Shown: positions 6,701-64,000 of the stretch, piece after piece
Layout of the letters: each line of letters starts with the position of its first letter
Position numbering within the stretch: position 1 is the first letter of the stretch
Source: Mytilus californianus
Lineage: Eukaryota
Length of the DNA: 64,000 nucleotides
Assembly (NCBI RefSeq): GCF_021869535.1
Contig: NW_026262723.1
Span: 63,922,001-63,986,000, forward strand
Direction of reading: 5' to 3'
The notes under the pieces: generated by a model
Seen by the model: the letters and a program-made list of their open reading frames with translations, nothing else
Database searches by the model: none
What the model was told of the DNA's origin: nothing
Program-made: the position numbers and the translations under genes

Positions 6701-9700
6701 TTCTTTGGTTATCTTCGTTCAAACTTTGACAAGTGAGTATATTTTACAAATGTCAAAGTTGTTTTGCATATTACCGTTAAATCCATGTGCTAATATGGAC
6801 CAGCAGGTCAAGGTTGACTGTTTCGTGTATTCTTATTACAAACATAAAAATACATCATGCTCCTGGTATACAGTTGTCAATATGGACGGGTATAAGACGG
6901 ACGACATTTTGTGGCAAGCGTTGGATTTGGTAGAAGAGACTAAAGATAAAGGCAATATTATAACCCAAAGTACTTACCTGTATCAGTCTAATAAAGGTAA
7001 TCATAACTGTATTTTATATCTTACGATGTTATCATAAAACAAAAGCCCTCCCTCCCTCATCTCGAGAATAAACAAACATTCATATTCGAACATACTAAGG
7101 AATAGGTGTGTCAGCATTAGAAACCCGACTACAAGACACGCTCAACATACAATATTTAAAATTGAGGAACTCCCTTTTTTGAGGGGCAATCATGCAGGGG
7201 CTGATCCAGCCGGGGGTTCCCAACTCAAGAGAAAAAGGGGGGGGGGGGGGGGGTACAACCATTCAAATGCATTAATTTTTTAAATAAAAGTCGGGTCCAA
7301 CCCGCGGAACCCCCAACCCCGGATCGGCCACTGGGTAACCGGGGGAGGGGGGTCCGGGAGTTAGAACCCCAATTTTTTTTTTAAAGATCAATGCTTTAGA
7401 ATAGAGACATATGACTGGGATAAAAAAAAATACCTTCAAGCAAAAAAGTATTTGAAGGATTATTTTTGTATTCCATATGGATGTTTATTGGAATTTCCTA
7501 AAATGTGTTTTTTTAATATCATGAAACAATTTGTAGTGAACACTATTAGTAATTTCTTATGTTCATAATCAATTTCTATTGTTACGAATAACAATGGACT
7601 TTGTTTGCGGGATGTAGAAGCAGGGGTTTCCAGAAACCCCGCTCGTCACACCCTGTGGTCAAAATCCATTGTTATTCGTAACAATAGATCTATTCAATTT
7701 ACACTTGTTTCAGAAATAGAAACTATGAAGTATAACAATAGAACTGGGGTGTAAGTTTAATGCATAACTTCACATGGTTTTATAATAACAAACAAACCCT
7801 CGACTATTTTCCTATCCCTCTATTTAACCGAAGCTACAATATAGTAATATTACTATACATCTTGTTATTGCACAATAGGAACCATGATGATTTAATCATT
7901 TGAAGTTTTGTGACACCTTCTGATTATTTTTATTCTGCTTTTAGGAAAATTTGGATTCCGAAGTTTAAAAGTTTAAAGTAAAGTTCAGTTTGATAGTTGA
8001 GGTGTGATGTCGTATTCCTTTGAACCGTGCAAAAAGTCATGCTTAATCATACTTCCATGTCTAATTTTTTAATCAAAGAAAAGAAATCTTTAAATGTTAT
8101 CGTGAATATGTCAACGGTTAAGCACATGTAACAGTTAATGGTTACGAAAGAGATTTTAATAAGCTTAATAAAATTATGCAAACTAATTCGGCGTGTTAAA
8201 CGTTAGCATGTTAAACTTAAAAAACTTTACCAAAATGTTTCTCTTTTATTTGGTGAAATATTCGTGAATAAATATTCCTAGAATAGATATGCATTTGTAA
8301 AGAATGTACGACAACAACAAAAAAAAAACTTCTCAGAATTCTTTTAAATCATTATCACTAAAATAAAAAAAAAAAAAAAAAAATTCTTATATTTTTTTCT
8401 TTAATAATTTAATTTAACAGCAAATAATGATAGATCGTAGCATCAACCTTTGTTTATCAAGCTAGACCAGAAGCTGTAAAAGTGAAACACACAATAAAAA
8501 AAAAACCTGCACAGTCCAACTACCAACCGGATGTCAAGTAGCTTAAACAAGAAAATAAAACAGCACATAGTTTGGAAAGCACTATAAAATTGTGCTCACG
8601 ACTACTAGAAAGCTAACTAAGGTTGATAAAAGGTTGCGATTACTACGACGCTATGGAACCAATGATTATAAATGGTAAACTTAAGTCATCTCGAAATTTT
8701 TACAACCACCGTTATGGCTTGCTTGTACGCAAATTTCTGTCACACATGAGTACGGATAAGTTACATTTGTCGTAGCCACAACCCCTCCCCATTTCCGTGC
8801 AAATTGATACACAAAATGTAATTATTATTTCCTCAGATTTGATCAAGACGCCATGCACTCCACTTATGAAGCAAGATCTGCTTTCCAGGGTAGTTCATCC
8901 CGATTTATTAAGGGTTCATGTGGCTCAATCTGCAGTTTTCTGTGTAGTAATGTTTGGAATGTTGTTGGTCTCTTAAGTCTTTTCTTCCTTCTTTTGGCAA
9001 TGGTATTGTCCTTAAATTCTGATTCCCCCTTGATAAATTATTACATGTTTTTCATTGACCAAGTTTGAGGATTCTAGCAAATACGCATGGAAGAAATCGC
9101 CTTAAATGTATTCAGTGTATTGTATAACTGTGAGTTTACCATTATCACTCTATTCGTAAAAACAGGAACTTTAAATAAACAATTACACAATATGAATTTT
9201 TAAACAATTATATCAATATCTTGTATATTTCTAGATAACCTCCACTGTTAAATTGTCTCGTGGTAGTGCATCCGCCTCATATTAATGTGTCGGGGTATGG
9301 TGACATGTCATCCGGCTGATTTAAAAAATCCGACTCAGCGTTTCAGTCTAGTACAAAGCAGGGTGGATATTCATATTGCATCAACATGTTCTCGTCTTAA
9401 ATACTAATATGCATTTAATTTGCCGCTGGACGTTAAACAGCCATTCATTGTACATCATCATCATCATTATAGCTCTAGATCGTTATTAATAAAGTGTATA
9501 CTCACTATGAAAGGCGTTCCCTATAGTGTTACCGGTATCTATTACAGCATTTCCAGCCACTGAAATACCACCAACCACTATGTTACCAAGATCTGTTAAC
9601 GCATCACCGATACTCGTAAATCCACTTTTGACTTGATCAAGTAAAGTCTGAGCTCCAAGCTGTACCAATGTTTCTAAAATGCTTCCCTGACTACTAAAAT

Positions 9701-11537
9701 CTGGTAATTTGTTAATGTTAACAGTTACAACATCTTTTGAGAGTGATTTTAATTTACCCCCCAGTGACTGCAAATTGGAAGCAATTCCAGAAAATTCATG
9801 CAAGCCTGTCAAACCTGAACCAAGGTGAGAAGATATTTGACCAAGACCTTCAAGGAACAATCCAGATTCTTCTCCTAATAATCCAAGTGCAGCTGGAAGA
9901 GATTTCCCCATTTTGTCCACAAAATTACTCACTTCTAATATCGGTTTAAAGATAGTTGGCATAATCTGTTTTATCGAATTTTGATAATATAACATCTGCG
10001 CGTTGCTAAAAAGTATAAAAGTTCGTTTTTTATTGTACAATCAACTCATTTTTTATATTAAATATATAACATGGTACAATATATATGGTAAGAGTAAGTG
10101 AACGTTATTATCATTGTCGTTGGTTGCTGTCTATAATATATTTCGCTTATTGTTTTGTCCATAAATTAGGCGGTTGGTTTTCTCGTTTGAATTGCTGTAC
10201 ATTTTGTCATGTTGAGACCGTTTATAGCCTATGGCATGTGTTTTGCTTATTGTTGAAGGCCGTGTGTTTATCTATATTTGTTTTTCGTCATTTGGTCTCT
10301 GGTGGATTGTTGTATCATTTGGTGTCTGATGGACTGTTGTCTCATTTGCAATAATACTACATCTTCTTATTTTGTTATCTATCTAAATCCAAATAATTAC
10401 TCCAACAAATACAACTGTGCATATTTCAATGTTACAAACTCGGAGAAGAGTGAGCGGAGTTTATTTCAATTTGTCAAACTCAGGGTAAGAGTGAGCGGAC
10501 TTTATTTCAATGTGTCAAACGAAGGGAAGAGAGAGCGGACTTTATTTCAATGTGTCAAACTCGGGGAAGAATGAGCGGATTTTGTTTTCAATGTGTAAAA
10601 CTCAGGGAAGACTTTAACGGTCTTAAATGCTCATAAAAGACATATCAACACACGTACAGGCTAACTTACCTGTTCATAAAACGTAAAATCATACCACTTA
10701 CTTTCGGCAAACTCCAGCAAGGCATTGTTGGCACTGTTCACCAGTGCTGTTTAACTTCGTTTCACACTCTTTGGAAGAGGAAAGCTGGACATAGTTTGTC
10801 TCATTTATTTTGCTAAGTATATAAAACAGTATCTCTCTTCTCACGTAGGTATCAAATTCTAAATATAAATTAAAAGAACAATTAGTTGATTAAAGGCTAC
10901 AATAAAAAAAAATGAACGATTTTTGATTTATGTCAAAAGAATATTATAGAGAGTAGAATTTTAGATTTGACGATGTTCCTTGATTTTGTTTTTTACTTTT
11001 TTTTCGGAATTTTCTGGTTTTATCCATGGAGTAAAAAATATGCCCGCTAACACTACTTTTCTTTTCATAATTTTATTACATATAATTTTAAAACCATTTT
11101 TTAAAATCTTACAAAATTCTTGTAATTTTGTCATACCTTTTGAAAGAAAAAGGTGCCAGTGGTTTATGTATCAAAAACCTATGGAGAACTATTTCCCGCC
11201 AACTTTTCAATATCTTATATCTCAATAGCAAGGACCGGTCCTTTCATTTTTTCTGCTTTTCTGGTTCCGTTATTCATATACTATCAATTTATAACAGTCT
11301 TTTAAAAAGCTTGTTATTTTGAAGCAGAGTAGCGAACATCCTTTTGTATATATGTAAGTACGTTTATCGAATCACCCATGAAAGTATGAACTTAAAGAGA
11401 AAGCAAGTGCTTATAATAAATAACTTACTTTGTGTACTATTTGTGTCCAAAGTTGCAAGTGTTAGGACTTTTTGTCTTCTCTCACATGAAACCATTAACG
11501 ATGTACTAAGTAAAACTAATAAAATAGTAAACGCCAT
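3522..11537 (-). CDS. G1: secreted Cys4-amphipathic cassette-GKR-Cys4 precursor, 6 exons, 387 aa (unnamed family)
   Basis: join(11537-11429,10858-10702,10005-9506,5374-5261,4540-4437,3701-3522) = 1164 nt. All GT-AG, phases 1,2,1,1,0, open frame throughout, colinear with G2-G4. Confidence 0.9.
4437..4540 (-). CDS. G1 exon 5
   Basis: 104 nt as in all paralogs; (V)CGEGIIYNQRNTLEHVKYLQGLYINTIQSQLITK|gtaatt. Confidence 0.9.
5261..5374 (-). CDS. G1 exon 4
   Basis: ttatag|GT; (S)IFGKRSVSVEKRDCDDQCTVCGKIDRLSHDTMTILAI|gtaatt; CX3CX2C motif. Confidence 0.88.
6452..6551. mobile_element. Palindromic foldback element (MITE-like), G1 intron 3
   Basis: Perfect 23-bp inverted repeat GGTGTGTCTGGATAAGAAACCCC (6470-6492 / 6510-6532) around a CGGCC-GGA-GGCCG inner hairpin, with imperfect outer arms. 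Confidence 0.75.
7195..7333. mobile_element. Small G-rich MITE-like element
   Basis: Degenerate CAGGGGCTGATCCAG ... CCGGATCGGCCACTG terminal inverted repeats with an internal poly-G run. Confidence 0.4.
7575..7688. mobile_element. Foldback element with 24-bp TIRs
   Basis: TCTATTGTTACGAATAACAATGGA (7575-7598) is the exact reverse complement of 7665-7688; central GGGGTTTC-CA-GAAACCCC hairpin. Confidence 0.75.
9250..9470 (+). mobile_element. Degenerate bivalve tRNA-SINE (Meta/V-SINE type) with (CAT)n tail
   Basis: Shares AATCCGACTCAGCGT..GTCTA(G/A)TACAAAGCAGGG..TATGCATTTAATTTGCCG..CGTTAA and a CAT-repeat tail with 35412-35657. Family assignment from recall. Confidence 0.55.
9506..10005 (-). 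CDS. G1 exon 3 (Gly/Leu/Ser amphipathic cassette)
   Basis: tttttag|C AAC GCG ... TTT CAT A|gtgagt; 500 nt, phase 2-1; inside ORF 9486-10040. Confidence 0.92.
10423..10612 (+). repeat. Minisatellite, about 40-41 bp x about 4.5, G1 intron 2
   Basis: ATTTCAATGTGTCAAACTCGGGGAAGAGTGAGCGGACTTT-like units in tandem. Confidence 0.85.
10702..10858 (-). CDS. G1 exon 2
   Basis: 157 nt; (K)FDTYVRREILFYILSKINETNYVQLSSSKECETKLNSTGEQCQQCLAGVCR; CX10CX2CX4C. Confidence 0.9.
11429..11537 (-). CDS. G1 exon 1 (signal peptide)
   Basis: MAFTILLVLLSTSLMVSCERRQKVLTLATLDTNSTQ then A|gtaagt, phase 1. Confidence 0.88.
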
Positions 11538-16094: not shown

Positions 16095-19000
16095 CTGCAA
16101 AAGAATATAAAGAAGAATAAATTATGTTGAATTATTAGATCTGTTAAAATAACTGTCCACCATAATTATGCATATCAAAAGATAGATTTTAATCATGATT
16201 CTTTTTCGGGGATGAGGGGAGGGGGGATTTTTTACCCAAATTTAGAACTCATGTCATGGCATAAATTACGAGAATAGATGCAAGATCAAATCAAATCAGA
16301 TGTGAGATAACCCAGAGCAAACCGTATTTTATTTTGGACTTTGCTCTACCGAATGAAAAAGTACCGGTATATGGCATTGCACGTTGTACTTTAATTTGTT
16401 AAGAGCCTTTAACAGTTATGTAACCTAAACATGTACGTCAGTTACCATACATGTTTTCGGCTTTTTCATTTAACATATATTTACCTTAGATACGATATGG
16501 TTTGTGAGGGTAGTGTTGTATAGAGATCTTAGATATGCAATGGTTTCAATAGCATTCTTTTGACTGGAAATTGTATTTGCTCCACAAACTGGAAATAGAT
16601 AAAATAAATGTTGTTTACAGCCTACTAGTATAATACTTACTTTTAAAGTGTTATCGTTATATACTTTCGCTTTCTACTTTTTTCTCCAATATATTCAGAT
16701 AAGGAAATGCGGCATGACTGTCAAAGAGACAATTATCCACCAAGACAAAAAAGATTTGTGGAAAAGGCTATTGTTTGAACTTTGTACATTTTCCAATTAA
16801 TTATTGTGAAGCCTATTCGAAGAGATATACAATTTGAAAGTATTCACTTACAAATCTTTTGTAAGATAGAAACAAGGATTGTCATAACATAGACTAGCTG
16901 TCTATACGGTATTGGTTTTGCTCATTGTTGAAGGCAATACGTTGACCTATAGTTATTAACTTCTATGTCATTTGGTCTCTGGTGGAAAGTTGTTATACCA
17001 CATATTGCTATTTTTATATAGATGAAATAATTACCTGATTGTAAAACTTCTTCTTTTGTGTGTTTCTTGATATCAAGTTTATCACACACTGGGCATGACT
17101 GTACACAACGTTTACCGAATATATCTAAAAAAAGGAACAGATTTCAAATTTCTTTCATACCTTAGTACGAAACATTTATTCATTGTGTTATGAATACTTC
17201 ATTACTAATTATTCAAAATTTATTTTCAAACTAATTTCAACATGCGTCTACAACAAAAACCCATTAAGCAAAATCAACGGAAAAATATACTATGAAACTA
17301 TTAAGTAAAGTAATGGCAAAGGGTCGTATTCTCTATGAACCTAGTGAGGTGTGTTAAAATTATGAAATGTTTAACCCTAAAAATCTTTATGTTAAATAAG
17401 TTATTATTTGTTTGTAATAATTGTTGATTGCATCAGAATCACAGGCAGCGGTATGCATAGAATAGACTCTCCTTTTGAGAATATAAACCATAAATCGTGA
17501 TTTTAAAGGCTTATATTGCTTTTCTTTATATTGTTTTTCTCTCAAAAAATTATTGCAAGGTATATTCAATGGTTTCTTGAAAAATGTTTAATCTCTCCAA
17601 TTGCATGTTTATCTCTTGCACTTCATTAATATAACCATGAAATGTATAAGTATAACTCACGACCGAGTGTATTTCCTATCGAGTGTCCTACATTCTTGAC
17701 TCCATCCACGAGTTTGTTACCAAGATCCGTAAGGGAACCACCTATCGAGTCTAATCCTCCTCCTAGTTGGCTAGACAGACCTGTAAATTCTGACCCAAGC
17801 CCATTCAAAAGGTCTGTTGTGCCACTTCCTAGACCGTTTACCAGATCAGTAGTGCCAGATGCCAAGCTGTTGCCGAGATCTGCGAATTTCTTTCCAAGAC
17901 TTTCAAATCCAGCACCTATCGTATCCAAAGTTTTTGTTACGCCATCTCTCAAACCATTGCCAATATTTTTAGAAACGCTTCCAAGGTCTTTGACAAATTC
18001 GCCTGCTTCGCCTCCAAGAAATTTGGTAGTGGATGACAATTGTGATCCAATAGATTTTACAAATTCTCCTGCAGCAAGAACTGGTTTGAGGGCCTCTGTT
18101 CCAACAGCCACCAAAATAGCTTCATAAACAGGGGGTGGCTGTCTAAGAAATTGTCAAAATATCATAGATTTTGGAAAATACTAAAAATAAATAGAAATAC
18201 ACTTTAAAAAGATATATGAATGTTTGATGTCTTATTTACGTAAGTGAACTTAAAACAACTATTTTATTCATAATACAAATCCCAGAAAGTATGCTTCATC
18301 TGTATTTTCAACACTCAGTGACTAAAGAGATGAATCACTCTGTTGTTATTTTATTTTTAAGATATTAACATACAGTCTACAATATACCGAGAACTCGTGA
18401 GATGACGGAACCTATTCTCTATGCGCATGAAGTTTCGGTTTTTTAAGTTATAAGTCATGTTAAAGTTTGAAGTTTGAGTGTTTTCAGTTATGATTTATGT
18501 TAAACATGAAGGGTAGGTGTTTTAAGTTTTAAATATGCTAAAACATGAGGTAATAATAAAATCTTATCTGTAGCTCATGGCGTTTAGATTCTACAAAAAA
18601 AAATCATTAAATACTAGACTCATAATATAATCTAGTACGTCAAACACGCATTTCGCCTACATAAGTGTACATTTGTATGAATTTAACGGTATTTCTAAAC
18701 AAGCTAAAACAAATTAAATCAGGCAAAGAAATTAGGCATCGAGTCTTACTCTGCACAAGGCATGAAACTGATCTTACTCATATAGGGGTTCACACAAACA
18801 CTACGTATCTGTAGATCTTATATAAGTTACTTCTTTTAAGTTCTGTTCTTAACTTTTAATATTGAGATGATATTGAATTAGGCTGACCATGTTAAGTGCA
18901 TTACTAATTATTCTAGAGGGCCGTATGCCTTTGCAGTAACTGAATCATGACAACAATGTTTCATTGGATAGCTATAGGTGGCTTGTTGTAAGTCAATTTT

Positions 19001-30000: not shown

Positions 30001-33000
30001 CAGACAGTCAGCACTATGTCAAAAACAAAATAAAAGCAAACAGACAAACACCACACAGGAAATATGAAATAAACAGCACGATCACCACAAAAAGCTTCCG
30101 ATGAACTCACTTGCTTGGAAGGGTAAAAAGTTTCTGCTCCACTAATGGAACCCGTTCTAACTGTACATTATTTCGTACCTGTTCATTGTCAATTTAGATA
30201 AAACATATAACATACCTTTAACATTCAAACCATTTACTTTCCTACACGATGGTCATTAATTTATTTTATAGTTATAATAACATTAACGAAATCGATTTTA
30301 CTGCACCTTATGTACACTTAATATTTGAACATCAAAAACTTTAAACAAACGATGAGGAGCTGATAAAACAAAACAAAAACAAAAGTTGCCAAAACCAGAT
30401 TGAGATACACTCTTAGATTTCCAATGATTTCCAAAATTCCATAACAGCAAATTTCAATAAAACAATAACCGTATGTTAATGCAAGTACCGCAGCACAGTA
30501 GGTAACTGAGCTTGTGATACACTTGTGAACTAATTCTATTCTTATTGCCTTAGTTTTATATTGATTCGAAAATAGATTGGTATTACTTTGAATATCTTTA
30601 AAATTTGAAACTTACTCTCCCAAACAGGTAAGACTGCATCTTTGATAGTATTTAAAACGACAGGTGCTTTTTCTGATATTGTCTGGCGAACTGTTTTCAA
30701 TGCATTTTCAAAGTCTTCGAAAGGCTTACCAATGAGCCCCTTTATATCGCCTATAACATTGGTAACATCACCACTAATAGCTTGAATTATCTCCCTTCCG
30801 GCATTCCCAATTGTTCTTCCAAGTGACTTAAACGCATCAGCGGCGGGGGATGCTATATATTTTCCACCTTTTATAAGCACCTTAGCAACTTCTAGCAGAT
30901 CATCTCCTATGTTATTTAGAAACGGACCCAATCGATCTCCCAAGAAGTCTTTAGCTCCGACTGCCCATTGTGCAATTTCCTTTAAAACCTCTCCGGCATA
31001 GGTAATCGGACGGTAATTGCCTACTGATATTTTACTTAACACTGCCTCAGATAAAGATGGAATTTCTATACTAAAACAAAATTAATTTCAATATTAATTT
31101 AGCATTTAAGTAAACATGTGTAATGTACAAGTAATTGTCTGGCAATAGGTATAAGTATTAGTTTGACGATTTTGCAATGTTTTATAGTAAATGCCGTAAA
31201 TTCAATGCAAAATTTTGATGGACAAACGTACTAAGCTAACAAAGCTAACAAAACCTTTAAACAGACTTATTAAGAAGGGATATAGTTACGATACTGTTGT
31301 CAGGTCATTAAAAATTGCATATTTTGGCTTTAATATTGATTCACTTATAGGGTCTTTGCATCGGAATTAAACATATTTATTCTAAAACCAGTTGTTGGCA
31401 TGACACGGGTTATGTTCTTCTCATATATTTTATGACGGTATAATACTAAACCCCTAACAGGAGGGATTGTACCTGATATTCATATGATGAAGACATAATC
31501 TTTCAATCTGTTTAATTGAGGTCTGGAGCTGGCATGTCAGTAACTGCTAGTAGTCTGTTGTTATTTATGTATTATTGTCATTTTGTTTATTTTCTTTTGT
31601 TTCCTATTCTGACATCGGACTCGGACTTCTCTTAAACTGAGTTTTACTGTGCGTACTGTTGTACGTTTGTTTTTTCTACATTGGCTAGAGGTATAGGGGG
31701 AGGGTTGAGATCTCAAAAAAACATGTTTAACCCCGCCGCATTTTTGCGCCTGTCCCAAGTCAGGAGCCTCTGGCCTTTGTTAGTCTTGTATCATTTTTAA
31801 TTTTAGTTTCTTGTGTATAATTTGGAGTTTAGTATGACGTCCATTATCACTGAACTAGTATACATATTTGTTTAGGGGCCAGCTGAAGGACGCCTCCGGG
31901 TGCGGGAGTTTCTCGCTGCATTGAAGACCCATTGGTGGCCTTCGGCTGTTGTCTGCTCTATGGTCGGGTTGTTGTCTCTTTGACACATTCCCCATTTCCA
32001 TTCTCAATTTTAAAACGTATCCTCCTAAATTTCATACTTAGCAGAGAAACGATGCAACAATAATCCTAGTATGTTTAAGATCAGAAATAAATTATATTGG
32101 TTTGAATTTGATCTTCTATGATATTTAATTCACTTCATAATTTGAAAATATAGTATATCAAAAAACAAAAAAATATTTACTGATTTACCAATTATTTCAA
32201 TCTGTAAAAGCTTTGAAGAGTTTTTACTTAGCCCTCCGGAGCACCTGATTTCACCCAAGGTTTGAGGTGAGTCTGGCTCATTCTTTAGTTTCTATGTAAA
32301 GTGCTGTTATTATTGTTTGTCCCACTGCGTTTTCATTTTTGGCCATGGTGTTGTCCGTTTTTACATTAACTTGGTTTCTTGCAGGAGTTTATGCGAATCG
32401 CGCATGTTTTGTTTTTTTTTAAATTGATTCGTATCTTCGCAATAAATTTGTGAGATTTGAACATTGCCTTTAATTTATTTCCCATAATATTTTCGATTGT
32501 CCAGTTGGTATCCTCTCTCTGTTTTATTGAACATAACGCCTTATTTTGTCAATGGCGTACTAATTATATGAGCATAAGTGTTTTTTTATCAAACTGTATG
32601 TAATTGGCAGTTGATACTAACCAAGCTCTCCGACATTCGCAGGTTATGACATAAGTTAGCAGTCTACAGCACGGTCATAAATCCCACTAAATCATACTTA
32701 AATGATATGAAAGAAAAGTATTTAAAGGAACATAATATCATTCATTTCGTGCGTCCGAAGTGCTTTTCTTGATTTTACTTCATTATTCCTGCCTTTGTAC
32801 AGGCATTTTCCGATGAAATTGGTGGGTTAAACATGGTTGTATAGCTACCTAAACCCCGCACCTGTATGCCAGTTGTTTATAGTTCCGTAACATTGACAAA
32901 ATTGGTGAGTAAGAAGTACAACCTTCTAAACTCATCATAGATACCAGGATGAAAATAAAATTATACGCCAGGCGTACGTTTCGTCTATAAAAGACTTATC

Positions 33001-35960
33001 GGAGACGCTCGGATCAAAAAAGTTAAAAAGGCCAAATAAAGTACGAAGTGAAGGTATATAGGACCAAAGGGGCATTTAAATAGCCAAAATCATCTGATGA
33101 GTTGAATCGCAGTCATACATTTTTTAAAAAATAGTATACTAATAACGTAAAACAAAATAACTTGCCTTGCAAAGTGACCAATATTTAGTACCTCATTATC
33201 ATATCAGTTAGTCGCACCAATTCGTTTGTTTTCATATCATTTGTGTGTGATTTATTGGGATTGATAACGTGTGTTCAGAAAAATAGACTGTTACTCGGTC
33301 GTTATTTGCCAAGTTTGAATTATTTATACATTCCGAAAGTATACTGAATATTTTACAGACGGAACCAATATATCAGAAGGACGACTTGATCCACTTGATA
33401 CACAAAACTAGTCTTTTCAGCGTTATGATATTAAAATTGTAGTATATTTTAACGGAAAATAATATGACTGTAAGAAGTCTGTATGTACATAAAATGTATC
33501 TTTGGAATCAAGTTTAGTTATATCATATACATTTTTATTGATACAATGTATCTTATCAAAAGATAAAATTCAAATAAACTTATGTTTTTAAAAATGTTAT
33601 TCCCTATAAATGTACAAAAACAACTTACTTAGTACAGAGATCTGCTTTACACGTAGAACATCCATCTATTGTACCGTTTAATTTACTTTGGCAGTTTCCA
33701 GCCAAATCAGATTGCGTAGATACAGTATCATTCAATCGATCTGCTATCAGGAACATCAGCTGCTTCCGAGCTTCCTTGTCAATACCTGAAAAATTCTAGT
33801 TAGTCATAACATTCTCTTTTAATATGACTGTTTTGCCGAGTGTGAAATCGCATTGCTATACGACGTGTCTCGGTAGTTATACATCCTACATTCATGTAAC
33901 TATATAGTTATGATGTTTCTTTTGTAAGTACGGTTCGATATTGTGTTATGTCTTATCGTTTGTGGTTTATATTCTGTATTTTCGGCACATTTCACATATG
34001 TCTTATTTGTCAGTCTAGTCGAGTTAATTTCCATTTTCCATGGATAAAGTATTGTGTTAGTCCAAATAATTATGACGTCGTCACAGCATTAATTTAAAAA
34101 GCCTTTCAAGACCGTCATAATCATGATAATCATTTGGACTAGTATTGTGAAAATAATTGTGATTTTTTGAATCTCGTTCCATATAATTGTATGAATTTCA
34201 AGATTAAATATACGTCACAAAAGTACGTCACTTTTTGAAGCGTTGATCCATTCATGTGACGCAGTTTATGGTGTCCTATGCTGTCGTTAATTCATGGTAG
34301 ATGTCCGTTGTTATTCTACAGTTTACATGTTGTAATGTACTATCATAATTTTTATTTATGTATTTCTCTGTGTTGAGTGTTCTTGCGTTTGTTTGTACTG
34401 TATTCCTGTCACGTACTGTTGTCATTTTAGCAATATTTTTTAACATTGCCATATAAGCGGTAGGTTTGGCTAGCCATAAAACCAGGTTCAACCCACCATT
34501 TATTCTTAAAATGTCCTGTACCAAGTCAGGAATATGGCAGTTGTTATCAATTAGTCCGTTTCTATGTATGTTGGCGTTTGATTTTGTTGCAGTTCAGTGT
34601 TTCTGTTGTTCCGTTGCTTTTCTCTTATAGTTGATGTGTTTCCCTCGGTTTTATTTTGTAACCCGGATTTGTTTTCTCTTAATCGATTTATGACTTTTGA
34701 ACATTGGTATACTACTGTTGTCTTTATTAATCACTTTAATTCCTATCTGAGTAGCAATTAATTGAAATAGGAAAGTAGCAGTGATTAATGTAAACATATT
34801 TAATTAAAGAAATCGTTATGTATAACTACAAGAGTAAAGACATAAATACGAAATATACAAGTAATTCAATAATTGGGATATATGATTAGCTCATATATTC
34901 TTCCAATACCTTGATTAACCGCAGGTTACCTGACTGTAATTGATATATAAAATGTCATTTACGACCTTACTCCACTCGGTTTGTAAATAATGTTGTTGTT
35001 CTAAAACAAAAGTTCCAACTCCCTGCGGCTAAGTTGACCTTCGAACCGATTTTGATTGATCTGTTCAGGATTTCTTTTATGCTCATACATTTTGGCCTCG
35101 AGCGTACATGATAAAGCGTCTTCATTGAAGAAACAGGTTTCGTGAGCAGAAAAATCGTTTTCATTTTCTGTTACCTCAACTAAATTGTTGCCGCTGCTGA
35201 CGGACTTCCGTTCTGGCATGATTAAGTTATTTATTCTAACTGTTACTGTTAAGTCTACGATTATTTTAATTATACTTAATCCTCCACGTACAGTTGATCT
35301 TACTTGAGTTTTGATCTTCTGGTTTTGATGTCCCTTGTTTTTTTGTGTGTTTTAAGTTTTTTTATGGAGTTTCTTTTTAAGGAAAAACATTTCAAACAAC
35401 CAACTTTTCAAGTGCTAAGCACGCGCAATAAGGAGTAAGACCAAAGACTGATCGGCTCAGCGTCAGAATAATGTGTCTGGGTAGGGTGACATGTCTTCCT
35501 GCGGGCTGTCACCATGTGAACTAGCACGTTACAAATCCGACTCAGCGTGTCGGTCTAATACAAAGCAGGGTTATTACTCATTCATCGTCCTGAATATGCA
35601 TTTAATTTGCCGTTGAACGTTAAGCAGTCATTCATCATCATCATCATCATTATCATCAAGTTTTAAAAAGGCAAAACAACAAACTACAAAGACATTCCGT
35701 TAGTAGGTGATAAAAATAAGAAATTTAAAGTACTTGTTTTCTTGATGATATTAGTATTTTGTATGTCATGTTAAATGTCTCCAAACAGTGAGATAAAATT
35801 TACATGCAGTTTGTGAAATATTAATTTTTAACTTACTTTTGACAATGGTAACATCAAGTTCCGTCACATTTATTGCTTGGCGCTTATATCTTCCTTCGGC
35901 GAACGTACACGAGAAGTAAAGAAAACAATAACAAAATAGATAAACTGAGATTGTAGTCAT
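26888..35960 (-). CDS. G3: family paralog, 6 exons, 381 aa (in-frame upstream ATG at 35987 would add 9 aa)
   Basis: join(35960-35837,33785-33629,31070-30616,29271-29167,28346-28243,27088-26888) = 1146 nt; GT-AG, phases 1,2,1,1,0, open frame. Confidence 0.92.
28243..28346 (-). CDS. G3 exon 5
   Basis: 104 nt; (V)CGSDTTKQKKEAMAEITFLKDLYNKTKDNEQITK|gtttgt. Confidence 0.88.
29167..29271 (-). CDS. G3 exon 4
   Basis: (R)TLGKLFRRKRCVSSCPSCNKLDIKKNTISQIIDS|gtaggt. Confidence 0.92.
30616..31070 (-). CDS. G3 exon 3 (mixed-charge amphipathic cassette)
   Basis: ttttag|T ATA GAA ... TGG GAG A|gtaagt; 455 nt, phase 2-1; overlaps ORF 30542-31042. Confidence 0.92.
31231..32012 (+). mobile_element. 5'-truncated Penelope-like retroelement (RT C-terminus + 3' UTR), G3 intron 2
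   Basis: Encodes KLTKPLNRLIKKGYSYDTVVRSLKIAYFGFNIDSLIGSLHRN*, matching the end of ORF 45501-46598; 3' UTR matches 44863-45500; candidate TSD AAACGTA at 31224-31230 and 32013-32019. Confidence 0.88.
32964..33008 (-). ncRNA. Degenerate hammerhead-like motif in a repeat
   Basis: Minus strand CCGATAA-GTCT-TTTAT-AGAC-GAAA-CGTACG(palindrome)-CC-TGGCGTA; stem II intact, CTGATGA core mutated. Confidence 0.4.
33629..33785 (-). CDS. G3 exon 2
   Basis: 157 nt; (S)IDKEARKQLMFLIADRLNDTVSTQSDLAGNCQSKLNGTIDGCSTCKADLCT(N). Confidence 0.92.
35412..35657 (+). mobile_element. Bivalve tRNA-SINE (Meta/V-SINE type), 5'-truncated, (CAT)n tail
   Basis: GCTAAGCACGCGCAATAAGGAGTAAGACCAAAGACTGATCGGCTCAG..AATGTGTC central domain recalled from mollusc SINEs; related copies at about 9250 and 22430. 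Confidence 0.6.
35837..35960 (-). CDS. G3 exon 1 (signal peptide + RYKR site)
   Basis: MTTISVYLFCYCFLYFSCTFAEGRYKRQAINVTELDVTIVK then A|gtaagt. Confidence 0.9.
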
Positions 35961-37601: not shown

Positions 37602-37784
37602 CTAGAACATTTTAGCTAATACGTCTTTTGATATTTTTATGGCCATGTCATCTATGTTAGAGAATTGAAATAGTCCGGAAAGTTGAAATCGTTTCTTGAT
37701 TTTGTCCGTTTGGAATGTAATAAAGGATTTCTTGAAGGCCATTTTCCCGCCAACAACAACAATACTGCTAGTTTCATATTCCAC
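37602..37784 (-). CDS. G4 exon 6
   Basis: tttcag|GTG; VEYETSSIVVVGGKMAFKKSFITFQTDKIKKRFQLSGLFQFSNIDDMAIKISKDVLAKMF*. Confidence 0.9.
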   Translation of the reverse strand: MEYETSSIVVVGGKMAFKKSFITFQTDKIKKRFQLSGLFQFSNIDDMAIKISKDVLAKMF

Positions 37785-38160
37785 CTGAAACAAAAAACAT
37801 AAAGTACAGGTTATTGTAGTTATCAATTTAAAATGTATTATTATAAAACATTAGTCGTGAAAGTAAAAAAAAATCAAAATACCAATGCAAGAAGACAATC
37901 ATATATTGTAATTTAATTAAGGCTATTCAACAATAACAATGCTGTTGTCTGTTAAACTTTGATTTAAAGATTGGTATTTGTTTATTTTTGTAACGACTGT
38001 TTATTACACGCAAATCTGAAGCTGGAGGTGTCACATCACTAATTCAACCAATTAGCATTGAGAACGTAGGTCAAAGTAGCCCAACTTTGACAAAACATAG
38101 TGCTTTTGTTTACTAAAACAAGAAAATGAATTGCATAAATGAAAAAAAATATGATGAATT

Positions 38161-38195
<35 letters not shown>

Positions 38196-41100
38196 GGCTC
38201 ATTTAACTTGTCCATGAATTTTCAATGGAATATTTAGTTTAATGTGCTACATTGTTTTGCTTATTGTGATATAAGTTTAATTTAGAATATACCTGGTTTT
38301 CACAAAGTTAACGTTAGGGTAAAATATTTAAAGATCTGTGAAAATTCAAACACTTGGTTGAATATAGGGCTTTGGGATTGGTTGAATGAGACCTGGAATT
38401 ATTTGGATTCTGAAGAAATATAGTTAGGTTATAAATTTTGAAGAAAAAATATAGTTTGTTTAGAATCTTGGTCACCGTAGGGAACTTGTCGCACCAACAG
38501 AACTGAAATTGATCCATACACAAATTTTCATATTTTTACATTTTTATAGTGATTCAATAATGGTTAGTTGTTTTGTAAAAGAAAGTAAATAATCAGTGGA
38601 GCATGTTGAACATGAATCAGTTTTAAAGAACAATAAAAAAGTCTATTAGCCTGTCCTTAATTGTTAAAAATCGTAATTACATGCAAAAAATAAGTTTGAG
38701 AATGGTTGTGTAAATGAAACGGTAATTGTATGTGCTGTTCATTAAATATTTGCTGAAATAAAAAATCATTAACATCTAGAAAAAACCTGTTGCAAAAATC
38801 CTCGCATGGTAAAAAAAAGTTCCTTATGTGTTTTATATCTTTATTTATCATTTTGACTCTGAATGTTCCTAAGGAGGGCAAAATATAAAAGTGTAAAAAT
38901 GCATCAAAATTTTGCGTTTTACTTTTATTTACAAATAAATTCACAAAATACAGATTTTATATTAGGTAATATTAATTCAATATGTAAACTTAACTCTACA
39001 CTGCATTTTTGTATAAAAGAATGATCCATACAGTTTTAGTTTTTTTAAATTATTTTAAATCTATAACAGAAGTGATGATCACCTTTGCATTTTTAATACA
39101 TGTTAATATACAAATAATATTAGTAATGGGTTTTATTTGTCGTTAGGTTGCTGTAGCAGTGACGTTTACCCCACATCTTGTTTTATACATAATAAATCAA
39201 GGTCTGGTCGTTAATATGATCTCAGATATATTAACATCCCATTTTATCCGAAAAGGGTTATACATGTATAAGCAAAATAACCGTTGTAACAATAAAAAAA
39301 AACAAAAAAAAATTAATCATACTAGTTATGACTTCATAATGGATTGTATGATATTAAGATACTGATAAAATGTTTACCTTTGTAACTACAGGTTTATCAA
39401 TAATGTAGTTGTATGTGTCTTCTAAACCTCGCACTTTGTCAAATATCTGTTTCTGTCTTGAAACAAAACTTGACCCACATACTGCAAATTAAGGAGAAAA
39501 ATGTATATAATTTAGATACCATCCTTTTTATTCTTTACATTGCCTTTTATTTAAACTTCAAGCAGAGAAAATATTAATTCTCTATAAATTCTCGTTTGTT
39601 ACAAATGAAGTATAAGCGGAGGGCATCAAGTCATTTCTTCCAAAAGTCAACAATCTAATATAAATAGACATGTTTCACATTGCTATATGCACTTACTTTT
39701 TCCAACTATTTGTTCTTCGGTGTTCTTATTTGTATCAAGTACATTACAAACTGGACAACTGTGTACACATCGTTTTGCAATCAAATGTCTTGTGGATCGT
39801 TTTCCAAAAAGTTCTGAAAGAGAAAATACCAAAATTGTCGAATAGTGTAATATCGTGATACGAACAAAACAAATTGGATCATTAAAACTTGCATTTAAAA
39901 TTAGATAAACATTTAAAAATAAAAGGGAGATGCCAAAGGGGGACTTGCTTAATATATCTTGAAAATCTATGAAAAAAAATTTCGACGGCCAATTATTTAT
40001 TAAAATCGTATGAATTCAAAACGTTATTGTTATCAATCATCACGAAATAAAATAAAAAACGTTAATTGATTTCGATTTATGCAACTATAAATTAATAAAC
40101 ACATTTATCTATTTATTATAACATACTTTTAATTCCACCCCAAATCTTTTTGCCAGTTCTCTTGATACCGTGTCCAACTTTCTTGCCAAATCTGCCCAAA
40201 CCTCGTCCAATATTTTTACCAAATCTGCCAACACCTCGTCCAATTTTCTTTCCAATTCTGCCAACCCCTCGTACAATATTTTTGCCGATTCTGCCAACAC
40301 CTCGTCCAATATTCCTGCCAATTTTTGCGACTCCCTTTCCTAATCTTTTAACATGACTTCCTATTTTTGATCCGATTTTCTTAATCCCACCTTTAACCTT
40401 ATTTAGAACTCCTCCAACTTTTTTTATGGTACGTCCAACTCCTCCTCCAATTTTTTTAAAAAACTTTCCTATTTTCTTTCCAAATCTAGCAGCTTCCTTT
40501 CCCACTTTCTTACCAATTTTACCAATGAACTTAGCTATTTCTGGAACAGGTTTGATCACTGTTAGTAACTTTCCTATGTCTGGTCTAGGTATTCTATGAA
40601 GAATACAAAAGATGACAACTTCAAATATTATACTAGTAATACTTAAGTTATATTAATTGGCTGTCAAATATGGTATTCAAACATAAAACACTGCAAATAT
40701 GTTATGTTGTTAACAAAAACACATTATATGTTTTGGAGTTTAGTGTGACGTCCATTTTCACTGAACCAGTACACAATTTTATTTAGGGGCCAGCTGAGGA
40801 CCACCTCCGGGTGCGAGATTTTCTCGCTGCGTTGAAGACCCATTGGTAGCCTTCGGCTGTTAAAAAAGAGGGACGAAAGATACCAGAGGGACAGTCAAAC
40901 TCATAGATCGAAAACAAACTGACAACGCCATGGCCAAAAATAAAAAGACAAACAGACAAATAATAGTACAGATGACACAACATAGAAAACTAAAGACTAA
41001 GCAACACGAACCCCACCAAAAACTGGGGGTGATCTGCTCTTTGGTCGGGTTGTTGTCTCTTTGACATATTCCCCATTTCCATTCCCCATTTTATTCCTCA

Positions 41101-43036
41101 GTCAAAAACCATTACTGAAATTAGCTTCAAGTCTGAGACAAATATTATCTTTCCCTGCTGAATGTATACATTCAACACATAAAAGTGTCTCATATATATT
41201 GAAACCTAACGAACAACAGACATGTGTATCACTCGAGTTTCTTACACAATAAAAGGTTGAGTATTATGTAACATTCAACGTGTTCTGTTAAAACGTGTAC
41301 ATGTATGAAAAAAATGCCGAGTAAATCACCTCATCAAATTATGTGTCTGTAGTAATTAAAAAAAAAGAGAAGAAAGGGATATTCAAACTCACAAGTCGAA
41401 AACAAACTGACAACGCCATGGCAAACATTTTAAGACAAACAACAGTTTTAAAAACACAACATAGTAAACTAAAGACTGAGCAACAAGAAGATAACCTTGT
41501 ATTTAGGCAAAATTGGTACTATAATTATCTTAAAGAGAACATATTCCTGATTTCAAGATGATAGGTCTATACAGGAGACAGACTTCAATATATGACTTGT
41601 CACTATAAAACCTTGTAATAAGGGATCAGTTTTTGAAACATTTGAGGTAATATTTAGCTTTCAGTATGTTGTATTTAATTCCAACATAATTACATTTTCT
41701 TGAGTTGTTTTGCCTAATCAATATATCAGTTCTACTTACTCCGGATCCTGTGCACAAATATTGCCATGACATTCATCACATGCCTTTATTGTTCCGTTAA
41801 CTTTAGTTTCACATGATTGTGTTAGAATCTGCTCCTCATCTGCCGTGTCTTTAATCTCATCGACGATATAATTAAGAATATCTGCGCTTGTTTGGTCGTT
41901 TATTACTGAAATATTTAAAATTTCAAATTATTTAAGATATTGTATTAATTTCATAATATCTTAATTATTTTAGTATAAATTTGTGTAAGGTTAGCTATAC
42001 TCCAATTCGTGAACTATTCTTTAAAAATTGTGGTAACAAGAAATTGAACAGGGAAATAAACTGCCTTCTGATATTAAAATGATAGTTGACTATTGTTTTG
42101 AACGAAATAGCTAATGCGTCGACAATAATTATTTACATATACTTATATTTTCCTGATTCCCTATATTGCCCAGCAGCTACAGTATAAACAAAATGGAAAG
42201 GATACATTGTAGATATAGATGAATAAACAATTATAAGCAAGGAACAGTGGTTTTACTGATGTTCTTAATCCTGCTATGTTTGAGGTCTTTGACAATAATT
42301 TGAAAAGATCACACCTGTAGTCACTAATAAATAAATTGTTTAATCAATTAAAATAAAGAATATGTGTTGGATGCACGTTAGACAAAAATCTAATGAAAAC
42401 GAGAAAAGAACCAACTGTTTAAGAATTGAATAGCGCTGTTATTGTCGTACTTCATCTTTCATGAACATGTGTTCACCAATGACCCAAAGCTCACACCTCA
42501 ACTTATATAGATAGGACAAAATGGCCAATAGCGCATTGAATATAAGCAACATGAGCGTGAATAAATATAATATCCGTAGCACAACCCGTCTTTTTTAAAC
42601 AACCTCCATCAGCAACGCTTCAGACCAGAAATATACAAAATAAAAAGAACAACTTTGAATAAAACATCCTTATAATTGTGATTTTGTCGATTAAAAATTT
42701 GCACCTTATAGTTTTTTTCATTGTTACAATAATTTATGTTTTTTTGAGTTAAGAAGTATAGTTTATTTTTGAAGTATTACAATTTAAGATTAAAAATATG
42801 TGTTGCTAAACTTTAAATAATTGTGGGTGGACTGCATAAATATATATTGTAATGTAAACTTGGTATGATAATATTTACATGCATATTAATAAATCAAAAA
42901 AATTAATCGGCTTAAAGACAAATAATAATTCTTAAAAGTTTAACTTACTATCCAATTTATTTTGTTGGATTGAGAGTAATTCTCCATTGCAAGTACAAAG
43001 TGCTGCAACTACTGCCACGAAAAGACGAATGGACAT
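37602..43036 (-). CDS. G4: family paralog with strongly cationic cassette, 6 exons, 374 aa (candidate antimicrobial/cytolytic precursor)
   Basis: join(43036-42949,41905-41740,40593-40127,39813-39697,39481-39378,37784-37602) = 1125 nt; GT-AG, phases 1,2,1,1,0, open frame. Confidence 0.93.
38163..38192. repeat. (AT)15 microsatellite
   Basis: Pure AT dinucleotide run. Confidence 0.95.
39378..39481 (-). CDS. G4 exon 5
   Basis: 104 nt; (I)CGSSFVSRQKQIFDKVRGLEDTYNYIIDKPVVTK|gtaaac. Confidence 0.9.
39697..39813 (-). CDS. G4 exon 4
   Basis: (K)LFGKRSTRHLIAKRCVHSCPVCNVLDTNKNTEEQIVGK|gtaagt. Confidence 0.92.
40127..40593 (-). CDS. G4 exon 3 (Lys/Arg/Gly/Ile 11-mer cassette)
   Basis: tcatag|A ATA CCT AGA ... 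GGA ATT AAA A|gtatgt; 467 nt; 33-bp DNA periodicity at about 40190-40325. Confidence 0.93.
40733..41092 (+). mobile_element. Nested repeats: PLE 3' end split by a family-B fragment (40862-41033)
   Basis: ...CCTTCGGCTGTT|insert|CTGCTCTTTGGTCGGG... rejoins the consensus seen intact at 31945-31970. Confidence 0.8.
41740..41905 (-). CDS. G4 exon 2 (acidic pro-segment + Cys cluster)
   Basis: 166 nt; (I)INDQTSADILNYIVDEIKDTADEEQILTQSCETKVNGTIKACDECHGNICAQDP(E). Confidence 0.92.
42949..43036 (-). CDS. G4 exon 1 (signal peptide)
   Basis: MSIRLFVAVVAALCTCNGELLSIQQNKLD then A|gtaagt. Confidence 0.9.
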
Positions 43037-59400: not shown

Positions 59401-59431
59401 GTATTGCTATGTACAGTAATTAATATATTGT

Positions 59432-59724
59432 AAAACATGTTTAACCCCGCCGCATTTTTGCGCCTGTCCGAGTCAGGAACCTCTGGCTTTTGTTAGTCCT
59501 GTATGTCTTTTTTTTAATTTTGGTTCATTTATATGTTTTGGAGTTTAGTGTGACGTCCATTTTCGCTGAACTAGCTTACATTGTTGTTAGGAAGCCAGCT
59601 AAAGCCCGCCTCCGGGTGTGGGATTTTATCGCTGTGTTGAAGACCCATTGGTGGCTTGGGCTGTTTTCTGCTCTTTCGTCGGGTTGTTGTCTCTTTGACG
59701 CATTCCCCGTTTCCATTCTCAATT
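59432..59724 (+). mobile_element. PLE 3' terminal fragment
   Basis: AACATGTTTAACCCCGCCGCATTTTTGCGCCTGTCC..TTCCATTCTCAATT, as at 31718-32010. Confidence 0.85.
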
Positions 59725-63893: not shown

Positions 63894-64000
63894 CTATAGC
63901 ATTTTATATATGATATCTTTTGATATTTTTATGGCCATGCCATCTATGTTGGAGATTTCAAAAAGTCCGGAAAACTGAAATCGTTTCTTGATTTTGTTAG
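63894..64000 (-). CDS. G6: 3' part of the terminal exon of a further G4-like paralog (continues beyond the window)
   Basis: NKIKKRFQFSGLFEISNIDGMAIKISKDIIYKML*; 25/34 identical to the G4 C-terminus with the same stop position. Confidence 0.8.
   Translation of the reverse strand, partial: NKIKKRFQFSGLFEISNIDGMAIKISKDIIYKML

What the first reader, a model, noticed from the sequence alone, without database searches (positions are those of the whole stretch)
40127..40593. G4 exon 3 encodes a roughly 140-aa, about +43 Lys/Arg/Gly/Ile 11-mer amphipathic repeat
Seen: by hand count exon 3 has 46 K/R and only 3 D/E. It parses into 11-mers (IGRGVGRIGKN, IVRGVGRIGKK, IGRGVGRFGKN, IGRGLGRFGKK, VGHGIKRTGKK) with a 33-bp DNA period. 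Knowledge: 11-residue/3-turn periodicity marks membrane-binding amphipathic helices (apolipoproteins, synucleins, perilipin-4), and cationic Gly/Lys/Ile helices are typical of linear AMPs such as cecropins and piscidins. Inference: a long polycationic membrane-disrupting region, or a polyprotein of AMPs released at internal KR/KK sites (HVKR, GIKR).
Basis: partly seen in the sequence, partly recalled or inferred. Interest (0 to 1): 0.88.

Follow-up and report, generated by a model that had tools for sequence, protein, structure and literature searches.

The report
Polycationic amphipathic exon, clusterin-like mussel protein
The region is a real, conserved coding exon of a secreted California-mussel protein, and it encodes a 156-residue, +43-charged stretch built to form one long amphipathic helix; this stretch sits inside a disulfide-locked scaffold that looks like the vertebrate chaperone clusterin, so a tethered membrane- or polyanion-binding tail (plausibly antimicrobial) fits better than a string of small peptides.

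Summary
On the minus strand, 40593-40127 is exon 3 of a six-exon gene. My hand model equals RefSeq LOC127707779 of Mytilus californianus (374 aa). The exon has 46 K/R and 3 D/E, the five quoted 11-mers, and a 33-bp repeat.

The hydrophobic moment has one sharp peak at 99 degrees (11 residues per 3 turns), in phase over all 155 residues and about 15 SD above shuffles.

The exon is under coding constraint. Against the M. trossulus ortholog, dN/dS is 0.42, splice sites are conserved, and indels are in frame (one is 44 codons, four 11-mers).

The exon is one domain of a bivalve family with no published characterisation found. The layout is: signal peptide, C-x10-C-x2-C-x4-C, variable amphipathic region, invariant F-G-[KR]-[KR], second Cys cluster, alpha/beta C-terminal domain. 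Paralogs in this window have the same periodicity but net charge -2 to -5. The hypercationic state arose once within Mytilus.

Clusterin is at or near the top of four fold searches and shares the first Cys spacing, but no score is significant and no sequence search finds it.

Most likely the exon encodes a convertase-freed, disulfide-tethered cationic tail. The AMP polyprotein reading is weaker. Function is untested.

The scan had already noted this family on adjacent DNA (s1-335324, s1-335364).

The parts
42949..43036 (-). G4 exon 1: start codon and hydrophobic signal-peptide-like N-terminus
   Evidence: Hand model with a gtaagt donor. The model is identical to RefSeq protein P0049.
41740..41905 (-). 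G4 exon 2: acidic helix ending in the first Cys cluster, C61-x10-C72-x2-C75-x4-C80, with the conserved N66 glycosylation sequon
   Evidence: C72 and C75 invariant; C61 and N66 nearly invariant. AF2 helix 25-79 has pLDDT 77-87.
40127..40593 (-). G4 exon 3 (the finding): 156-residue Gly/Lys/Arg/Ile region, net +43, with an 11/3 amphipathic periodicity
   Evidence: dN/dS is 0.42 with in-frame indels against M. trossulus. The length of 467 nt is not a multiple of 3, so skipping the exon would break the frame.
40146..40310 (-). Five tandem 33-bp (11-codon) units, the most recently amplified part of exon 3
   Evidence: Orthologs carry more copies: the aligned gap in the repeat block is 44 codons against M. 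trossulus and 35 columns against M. galloprovincialis.
39697..39813 (-). G4 exon 4: end of the helix region, invariant F-G-K-R site (39808-39797), nine-residue spacer (S-T-R-H-L-I-A-K-R) ending in a second K-R, then C256-x3-C260-x2-C263
   Evidence: F243, G244, C260, C263 invariant.
39378..39481 (-). G4 exon 5: C281 and a long helix
37602..37784 (-). G4 exon 6: C-terminal strands plus helix (alpha/beta domain) and stop codon
   Evidence: pLDDT 84-91.
9506..10005 (-). Paralog A exon 3: same periodicity (peak 101 degrees), net charge -4
   Evidence: Matches P0001.
17661..18142 (-). Paralog B exon 3: same periodicity (peak 99 degrees), net charge -5
30616..31070 (-). Paralog C exon 3: same periodicity (peak 99 degrees), net charge -2. 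The donor is uncertain (30616 or 30730).
63894..63998 (-). Last exon of paralog F (P0048), whose central region is also hypercationic (+46). The rest of this gene lies beyond the window.

Best explanation
Exon 3 is a constitutive coding exon of a secreted Mytilus protein. It is not a stand-alone peptide precursor.

Shown:
- The exon encodes about 156 residues with net charge +43.
- Hydrophobic residues (I/V/F/L) recur every 3.67 residues, in one phase along the whole exon.
- If helical, this is one amphipathic helix. It would be about 230 A long (my arithmetic: 156 residues x 1.5 A). It has a narrow hydrophobic stripe flanked by glycines and a wide Lys/Arg face.
- The region lies between two Cys clusters and ends at an invariant F-G-[KR]-[KR] motif.
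- Family members that lack C80 also lack C256.
- The same architecture with near-neutral to slightly acidic central regions occurs in paralogs and in oysters.
- The hypercationic state is derived, monophyletic within Mytilus, and retained in three species.

Inferred:
- The two Cys clusters form an antiparallel disulfide ladder, as in clusterin.
- A furin/prohormone-convertase type enzyme cuts at FGKR. Carboxypeptidase and amidating enzymes may then leave a Phe-amide.
- The cationic region thereby becomes a long free tail of the N-terminal chain, still tethered to the C-terminal chain by disulfides. This parallels the convertase-generated lipid- and client-binding tails of clusterin.
- With 25% Gly the tail is disordered in water. 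It folds into a surface-lying amphipathic helix on anionic surfaces such as bacterial membranes, LPS or teichoic acids, where it acts in a carpet-like antimicrobial or agglutinating way.

The structural part is well supported. The host-defence function is the inferred step.
For: - Gene model and identity to RefSeq.
- Composition and repeat.
- Coherent 99-degree hydrophobic moment, uH 0.64, against 0.227 +/- 0.027 for shuffles. Position-specific helical wheel.
- Coding constraint: dN/dS 0.42, in-frame indels of 9 and 44 codons, conserved splice sites.
- Family alignment with invariant C72, C75, F243, G244, C260, C263, and joint loss of C80 and C256 in oysters and P0012.
- Central-region charge table (+38 to +48 in two Mytilus clades, +7/+8 in the E-like clade, -6 to -1 elsewhere), with moment peaks at 97-101 degrees in all.
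- Tree on the independent C-terminal domain groups the hypercationic members (92/93), sister to E-like (100/98).
- AF2: scaffold pLDDT 82-91, central region below 50.
- Clusterin disulfides 102-313, 113-305, 116-302, 121-295, 129-285 give spacings x10, x2, x4, identical to C61/C72/C75/C80 (PMC10488069).
- Clusterin's three-domain structure and furin-made tails that bind lipid and clients: PMC12527946.
Against: - There is no transcript, peptide or activity evidence for G4. Only the genome record carries this exact protein, and no transcript-sized assembly was found for any cationic member.
- Sequence methods do not see clusterin: Pfam and PDB profile searches at E up to 10.
- The family has 4+4 (or 3+3) Cys rather than 5+5, and the second cluster's spacing differs.
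- FGKR is not a classical R-x-[KR]-R furin site.
- 25% Gly could mean the region never becomes helical.
- Near-neutral to slightly acidic paralogs show that the ancestral role of the region is not cationic killing.
Confidence: 0.5

Rival explanations
1. Polyprotein reading: convertases cut at the internal KK/KR sites and release several short cationic amphipathic AMPs, including a C-terminally amidated ...IWGGIKKLF-NH2 type peptide.
For: There are eleven dibasic sites inside exon 3, plus FGKR and AKR just after it. HVKR lies in the most conserved block of the cationic clades. The last 13 residues before GKR share 8/13 positions with the scorpion peptide IsCT, whose sequence was confirmed in PMC4360471.
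Against: GIKR is not conserved (GIKK, GIKN, GVKK in relatives). KK pairs are an unavoidable by-product of the 11-mer design (positions 10-11) and are not spaced as precursor junctions with acidic spacers. No dibasic site is conserved at the N-terminal edge. Near-neutral to slightly acidic paralogs keep the same region length and periodicity without such sites. The phase of the amphipathic pattern is continuous over 155 residues, which would be unnecessary for independent short peptides.
Confidence: 0.12
2. Non-immune binder: the family are apolipoprotein- or chaperone-like extracellular proteins. The cationic versions bind polyanions or lipids for another purpose, such as mucus or glycosaminoglycans, nucleic acids, gamete or egg coats, or adhesive or shell matrices. 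They do not kill microbes.
For: The ancestral central regions are near-neutral to slightly acidic 11/3 amphipathic segments, as in exchangeable apolipoproteins. The profile search picks ApoA-IV and designed coiled coils. The architecture is clusterin-like. Family homologs occur in oysters, including transcript-sized contigs of 1.1-1.2 kb.
Against: A charge of +38 to +48 is maintained in two paralog clades and three species. The gene sits in a tandem array that earlier notes place next to the mytilin AMP locus (not verified here). There is no Tyr/DOPA signature of mussel adhesive proteins.
Confidence: 0.3
3. Not a functional coding exon: a low-complexity open frame produced by a 33-bp minisatellite in an intron or pseudogene.
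For: The repeat is recent and varies in copy number between species. No transcript evidence was found for G4. One neighbouring paralog (E) has a broken frame.
Against: Six exons join in frame through canonical sites, and the result is identical to the RefSeq model. dN/dS is 0.42, indels are whole codons, and splice sites are conserved in M. trossulus. Third-position excess is 7/3/22 between units. The non-repetitive N-terminal 90 residues of the exon share the same phase and periodicity.
Confidence: 0.03

Closest known systems
Clusterin (apolipoprotein J) and clusterin-like protein 1, vertebrates
   Same: Both are secreted. Both have a long N-terminal helix ending in C-x10-C-x2-C-x4-C, a second Cys cluster containing CxxC that pairs antiparallel with the first, and a basic processing site in a flexible central region. 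Both have a helical coiled-coil plus a C-terminal alpha/beta domain. In clusterin the central tails bind lipids and clients (PMC12527946, PMC10488069). Clusterin is at or near the top of four fold searches with two independent models.
   Different: No sequence similarity is detectable. The family has 4+4 or 3+3 Cys rather than 5+5. The site is FG[KR][KR] and not RxxR. The central region is expanded to 100-216 residues of 11/3 amphipathic repeat and, in G4, carries +43. Clusterin's tails are short and hydrophobic. Homology is unproven.
11-mer repeat amphipathic lipid binders (apoA-I/A-IV/E, alpha-synuclein, perilipin 4)
   Same: They share the 11-residue (3-turn) periodicity, tandem amplification of 11/22/33-residue units, small residues flanking a narrow hydrophobic face, and likely disorder-to-helix folding on a surface (general knowledge; periodicity tested).
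   Different: There is no family-level sequence match: ApoLp-III scores E 0.11 and ApoA-IV about 1e-3, on composition only. The charge density of +0.28 per residue is far above these proteins. The repeat is embedded in a disulfide scaffold.
Linear cationic alpha-helical AMPs (cecropins, piscidins, scorpion IsCT) and mussel myticalins
   Same: All are cationic, Cys-free and Gly/Lys/Ile-rich with an amphipathic design. G4 has a C-terminal Gly-Lys-Arg amidation-type signal. Its last 13 residues match IsCT at 8/13 positions. Myticalins are the known linear cationic AMPs of Mytilus (PMC5577615, PMC12294457).
   Different: The G4 region is three to ten times longer. It is not flanked by a conserved N-terminal cleavage site or an anionic propeptide, and it is part of a folded 374-aa protein. 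There is no sequence relationship to cecropin or piscidin families in Pfam. A relationship to myticalins was not tested.

Membership tests
Clusterin family (Pfam CLU / apoJ) | Significant match to the clusterin sequence profile | tested here: not met
   Pfam gave no clusterin hit for the single exons at E up to 10, or for six full-length members at E up to 1. Profile searches of PDB sequences at E up to 10 do not list clusterin among the rows shown for the whole family (best 60 of 263), nor for the N- and C-terminal scaffold profiles.
Clusterin family (Pfam CLU / apoJ) | Two Cys clusters joined by an antiparallel ladder of five disulfides | tested here: inconclusive
   The first cluster spacing x10, x2, x4 is identical to Cys102/113/116/121, and both have a CxxC in the second cluster. 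C80 and C256 are lost together in oysters and P0012, as expected for a pair. However, there are only 4+4 Cys, the second-cluster spacing differs (x3, x2, x17 against x9, x6, x2, x7), and no disulfide map is available.
Clusterin family (Pfam CLU / apoJ) | Internal convertase cleavage into two disulfide-linked chains | not testable with these tools
   An invariant F-G-[KR]-[KR] lies between the clusters. Whether it is cleaved is unknown.
Clusterin family (Pfam CLU / apoJ) | Three-domain fold (disulfide domain, coiled coil, C-terminal alpha/beta roll) | tested here: inconclusive
Linear cationic alpha-helical AMPs (cecropin/piscidin type) | Cationic amphipathic helix | tested here: met
   Net +43, with a moment peak at 99 degrees and uH 0.64, about 15 SD above shuffles. 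This is a computed propensity only; no measured structure exists.
Linear cationic alpha-helical AMPs (cecropin/piscidin type) | Short mature peptide (about 12-50 aa) excised from a dedicated precursor | tested here: not met
   The region is 156 aa and continuous in phase. It sits inside a conserved 374-aa scaffold. No conserved cleavage site lies on its N-terminal side; only FGKR lies at its C-terminal end.
Linear cationic alpha-helical AMPs (cecropin/piscidin type) | Antimicrobial or membrane-lytic activity | not testable with these tools
   Needs synthesis or expression and MIC, leakage and haemolysis assays.
Exchangeable apolipoprotein / 11-mer repeat lipid binders | Tandem 11-residue (or 22/33) amphipathic periodicity | tested here: met
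   33- and 66-bp DNA periods. Residue autocorrelation peaks at lags 11, 22 and 33, and the moment peaks at 98-99 degrees. The same holds in all paralogs.
Exchangeable apolipoprotein / 11-mer repeat lipid binders | Sequence membership in the apolipoprotein, synuclein or perilipin families | tested here: not met
   Only sub-threshold compositional hits were found: ApoLp-III E 0.11, 13 bits against a cut-off of 36, and ApoA-IV chains at E about 1e-3 within a list of coiled coils.

The most novel reading that the evidence does not exclude
Bivalves possess a previously unrecognised clusterin-fold family whose central, convertase-freed tail is a hypervariable module. In Mytilus, one lineage turned that tail into a roughly 160-200-residue, +40 to +48 amidated amphipathic helix that stays disulfide-tethered to the scaffold. 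This would be a giant tethered antimicrobial 'carpet' effector, a class of host-defence protein distinct from all known short AMPs. It would also be the first functional clue to invertebrate relatives of clusterin.
Probability: 0.3. Interest if true: 0.8.

Novelty: new variant of a known kind. Interest (0 to 1): 0.62.

Why it matters
Mussels are a model for hyperdiverse innate-immune gene families. As far as the literature searched here shows, their known AMPs are small disulfide-rich peptides plus the linear myticalins.

A conserved, tandemly duplicated family carries one domain that keeps a strict 11/3 amphipathic periodicity while its charge ranges from -6 to +48. This offers a natural experiment in how charge tunes amphipathic-helix function.

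If the clusterin resemblance reflects homology, it gives clusterin (a major Alzheimer-risk chaperone usually discussed as a vertebrate protein) lophotrochozoan relatives whose functional 'tails' are greatly expanded. If the cationic tails are antimicrobial, they are an unusual design: long, tethered and possibly amidated.

All public records of the family read 'uncharacterized protein', and no paper was found by accession or by sequence string.

Tried and rejected
- Word-indexed homology search with exon 3 alone found nothing, because the length filter (87-276 aa) excludes the 374-aa parents.
- Pfam on exon 3 gave only sub-threshold compositional hits: suprabasin GxHH, bacterial collagen, CsmC. 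The single flanking exons gave nothing.
- Rfam found no family in the window.
- The first literature search was spoiled because 'clusterin' matched 'clustering'. The search for invertebrate clusterin literature was uninformative.
- ESM Atlas feature searches and the atlas fold search returned nothing usable.
- AFDB cluster search with the short paralog found mainly other uncharacterised proteins with masked organisms. It extends the fold family but names nothing.
- Exact-sequence look-up found G4 only in the genome record and did not find the M. galloprovincialis ortholog at all, so no transcript evidence was obtained.
- I considered insulin-like (B chain, C peptide, A chain), saposin-like and CHCH Cys patterns and rejected them by Cys spacing (reasoning from general knowledge, not a tool test).
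- I considered mussel adhesive or shell-matrix proteins and rated them unlikely, because the exon has no Tyr at all and the scaffold is conserved in oysters.
- I could not run a profile-profile (HHalign) comparison with clusterin, because no clusterin sequence was available as a session reference.

Full report
**Observation.** The feature lies on the minus strand. The frame 40592-40119 is open for 158 codons and contains 46 K/R, 3 D/E, 39 Gly and 22 Ile. Tandem Repeats Finder gives a 33-bp period with 4.5 copies, 82% matches and score 195, and also a 66-bp period. Among the four core units, differences fall 7/3/22 on codon positions 1/2/3. That is the pattern of a translated repeat.

**Gene model.** Reading the minus strand from 43600 to 36400, I assembled six exons:
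- exon 1: 43036-42949
- exon 2: 41905-41740
- exon 3: 40593-40127
- exon 4: 39813-39697
- exon 5: 39481-39378
- exon 6: 37784-37602

All have AG/GT sites and compatible phases, and together they give a 374-aa protein. This protein is letter for letter the RefSeq protein of LOC127707779 of Mytilus californianus, and the genomic locus fetched for it is identical to the window. Exon 3 is 467 nt, not a multiple of three, so skipping it would shift the frame of the conserved C-terminal half. It is not a symmetrical cassette exon.

**Amphipathic periodicity.** The Eisenberg hydrophobic-moment spectrum of the whole exon has one sharp peak at 99 degrees per residue (11 residues in 3 turns is 98.2 degrees), with uH 0.64. 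The maximum over all angles in shuffled sequences is 0.227 +/- 0.027. The non-repetitive N-terminal 90 residues and the repetitive 66-residue core share the same phase. Residue autocorrelation peaks at lags 11, 22 and 33. In 11-mer register:
- positions 1, 5, 8 and part of 2 and 9 are I/V/F/L;
- positions 3, 4, 7, 10 and 11 are K/R;
- glycine flanks the hydrophobic stripe.

There is no beta-type peak at 160-180 degrees. AlphaFold2 gives the region pLDDT below 50, while the flanking scaffold reaches 82-91. With 25% Gly, this fits a segment that is disordered alone and helical only on a surface. That last step is inference.

**Coding constraint.** The M. trossulus ortholog locus keeps both splice sites. 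Its exon 3 differs by two in-frame indels of 9 and 44 codons; 44 codons is four 11-mers. dN/dS over 155 aligned codons is 0.42, with dS 0.31. The M. galloprovincialis and M. trossulus orthologs are 430 aa with more 11-mer copies.

**Family context.** tblastn of the model against the window shows a tandem array of paralogs, all on the minus strand: about 10835-3540, 20141-15924, 33783-28240, G4, 60141-54159, and the last exon of a further gene at 63998-63894.

A profile of the last exon, searched against 1.84 billion representatives, returned 26 proteins. The ones I looked up are unnamed, 'uncharacterized' or 'hypothetical' proteins of Mytilus species and Crassostrea/Magallana, some from transcript-sized contigs of 1.1-1.2 kb.

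The 17-sequence alignment shows these conserved positions:
- invariant: C72, C75, F243, G244, C260, C263, R346
- nearly invariant: C61, N66, P261, C281, G282

The common plan is: signal peptide, long helix ending in C-x10-C-x2-C-x4-C, a variable central region of 27-216 residues, an invariant F-G-[KR]-[KR], C-x3-C-x2-C-x17-C, a long helix, and a strand-rich C-terminal domain. The oyster proteins and P0012 lack both C80 and C256. This joint loss is what a C80-C256 disulfide in an antiparallel ladder predicts.

**Charge is the variable, periodicity the constant.** The moment peak is at 97-101 degrees in every member. Net charge of the central region varies by clade:

| Clade | Net charge of central region |
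|---|---|
| G4 clade | +42 to +45 |
| Sister clade (includes the gene just right of the window) | +38 to +48 |
| E-like clade | +7 to +8 |
| All others, including oysters | -6 to -1 |

A maximum-likelihood tree built only from the C-terminal domain groups the hypercationic proteins (support 92/93). It places them sister to the E-like clade (100/98), with the near-neutral to acidic members outside. The extreme charge is therefore a derived state that arose once in Mytilus and has been kept in three species. A region-restricted search finds the cationic segment only in Mytilus.

**What the scaffold resembles.** The Cys spacing reminded me of clusterin. The literature confirms the clusterin disulfides 102-313, 113-305, 116-302, 121-295 and 129-285, which give spacings x10, x2, x4, x7 (PMC10488069). 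These are identical to G4's C61/C72/C75/C80 for the first three intervals.

[quoted passage not shown] It also describes two flexible tails created by furin cleavage of the central region. With an amphipathic helix, those tails mediate client, receptor and lipid binding (PMC12527946).

Fold searches agree in rank but not in significance:

| Model | Search | Clusterin result |
|---|---|---|
| G4 | PDB Foldseek | ranks 2-3, E about 0.8 |
| G4 | AFDB Swiss-Prot | top eight are all clusterin or clusterin-like 1, best E 0.015 |
| 234-aa paralog | PDB Foldseek | rank 1, E 0.06 |

**Mechanism proposed.**
- Shown: a secreted-type precursor; a coherent amphipathic, hypercationic central domain; a conserved dibasic, amidation-type motif at its end; Cys covariation.
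- Inferred: convertase cleavage at FGKR, with a second KR nine residues on, frees the cationic domain as a long C-terminal tail of the N-terminal chain. The tail may end in Phe-amide and stays tethered through the disulfide ladder. It folds flat onto anionic membranes or cell-wall polyanions.

This parallels clusterin's tails, here enlarged and recharged. A host-defence role is favoured for three reasons: the derived and conserved +40s charge, the tandem expansion, and the reported proximity to the mytilin locus. The role remains untested.

HVKR is conserved, but GIKR is not. The KK pairs are intrinsic to positions 10-11 of the repeat. No conserved site bounds the region on its N-terminal side. 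The amphipathic phase is continuous over the whole exon. Release of the last 13 residues (…IWGGIKKLF before GKR) remains possible. These match the scorpion peptide IsCT at 8/13 positions, and the IsCT sequence was confirmed in PMC4360471.

**Limits.**
- No transcript, proteomic or functional evidence for G4 was obtainable.
- No signal-peptide predictor was run.
- A profile-profile comparison with clusterin could not be run.
- No publication mentions the accessions or characteristic sequence strings. The mussel AMP literature retrieved lists myticalins as the linear cationic family.

Noticed in passing
window 3540-10835, 15924-20141, 28240-33783, 37602-43036, 54159-60141, 63894-63998 (all minus strand): There is a tandem array of at least six paralogs of the same six-exon gene in 64 kb. 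Their central exons have similar length (455-500 nt in A, B, C and G4) but net charge from -5 to +43.
   Followed up: partly
window 58284-58392 (minus strand), paralog E exon 4: The reading frame is broken between the first and second Cys of the second Cys cluster, around 58338 and just after an A10 run. A stop follows in the original frame. The expected acceptor of its last exon (about 54335) is also not canonical. This is probably a pseudogene or an assembly indel. The orthologs P0054 and P0029 are intact.
   Followed up: partly
window 39797-40166 (minus strand), exon 3/4 junction: The last 13 residues before the invariant G-K-R (T-G-K-K-I-W-G-G-I-K-K-L-F) match the amidated scorpion peptide IsCT at 8/13 positions. 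IsCT is ILGKIWEGIKSLF (PMC4360471). The family-wide version of this motif is ...[IL]-F-G-[KR]-[KR].
   Followed up: partly
window 40876-41010 and 41364-41489 (intron 2 of G4): Two direct copies of an element of about 135 nt, 81-84% identical and about 485 bp apart. Probably an interspersed SINE/MITE-like repeat. It is not part of the gene's coding sequence.
   Followed up: no
P0053 (M. trossulus LOC134727041 isoform X2): A predicted isoform joins exon 3 directly to exon 5 (…KKIWSGFK-ICGSDF…). This drops exon 4, with the FGKR site and three of the four Cys of the second cluster. Exon 4 is 117 nt and symmetrical in phase, so skipping it keeps the frame.
   Followed up: no
AFDB cluster hits of the P0006 model: Significant fold matches (E 1.9e-11 to 1e-3) to other uncharacterised proteins. 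By accession style these look like scallop, brachiopod and bryozoan entries (organism column masked), which suggests the scaffold is lophotrochozoan-wide.
   Followed up: no
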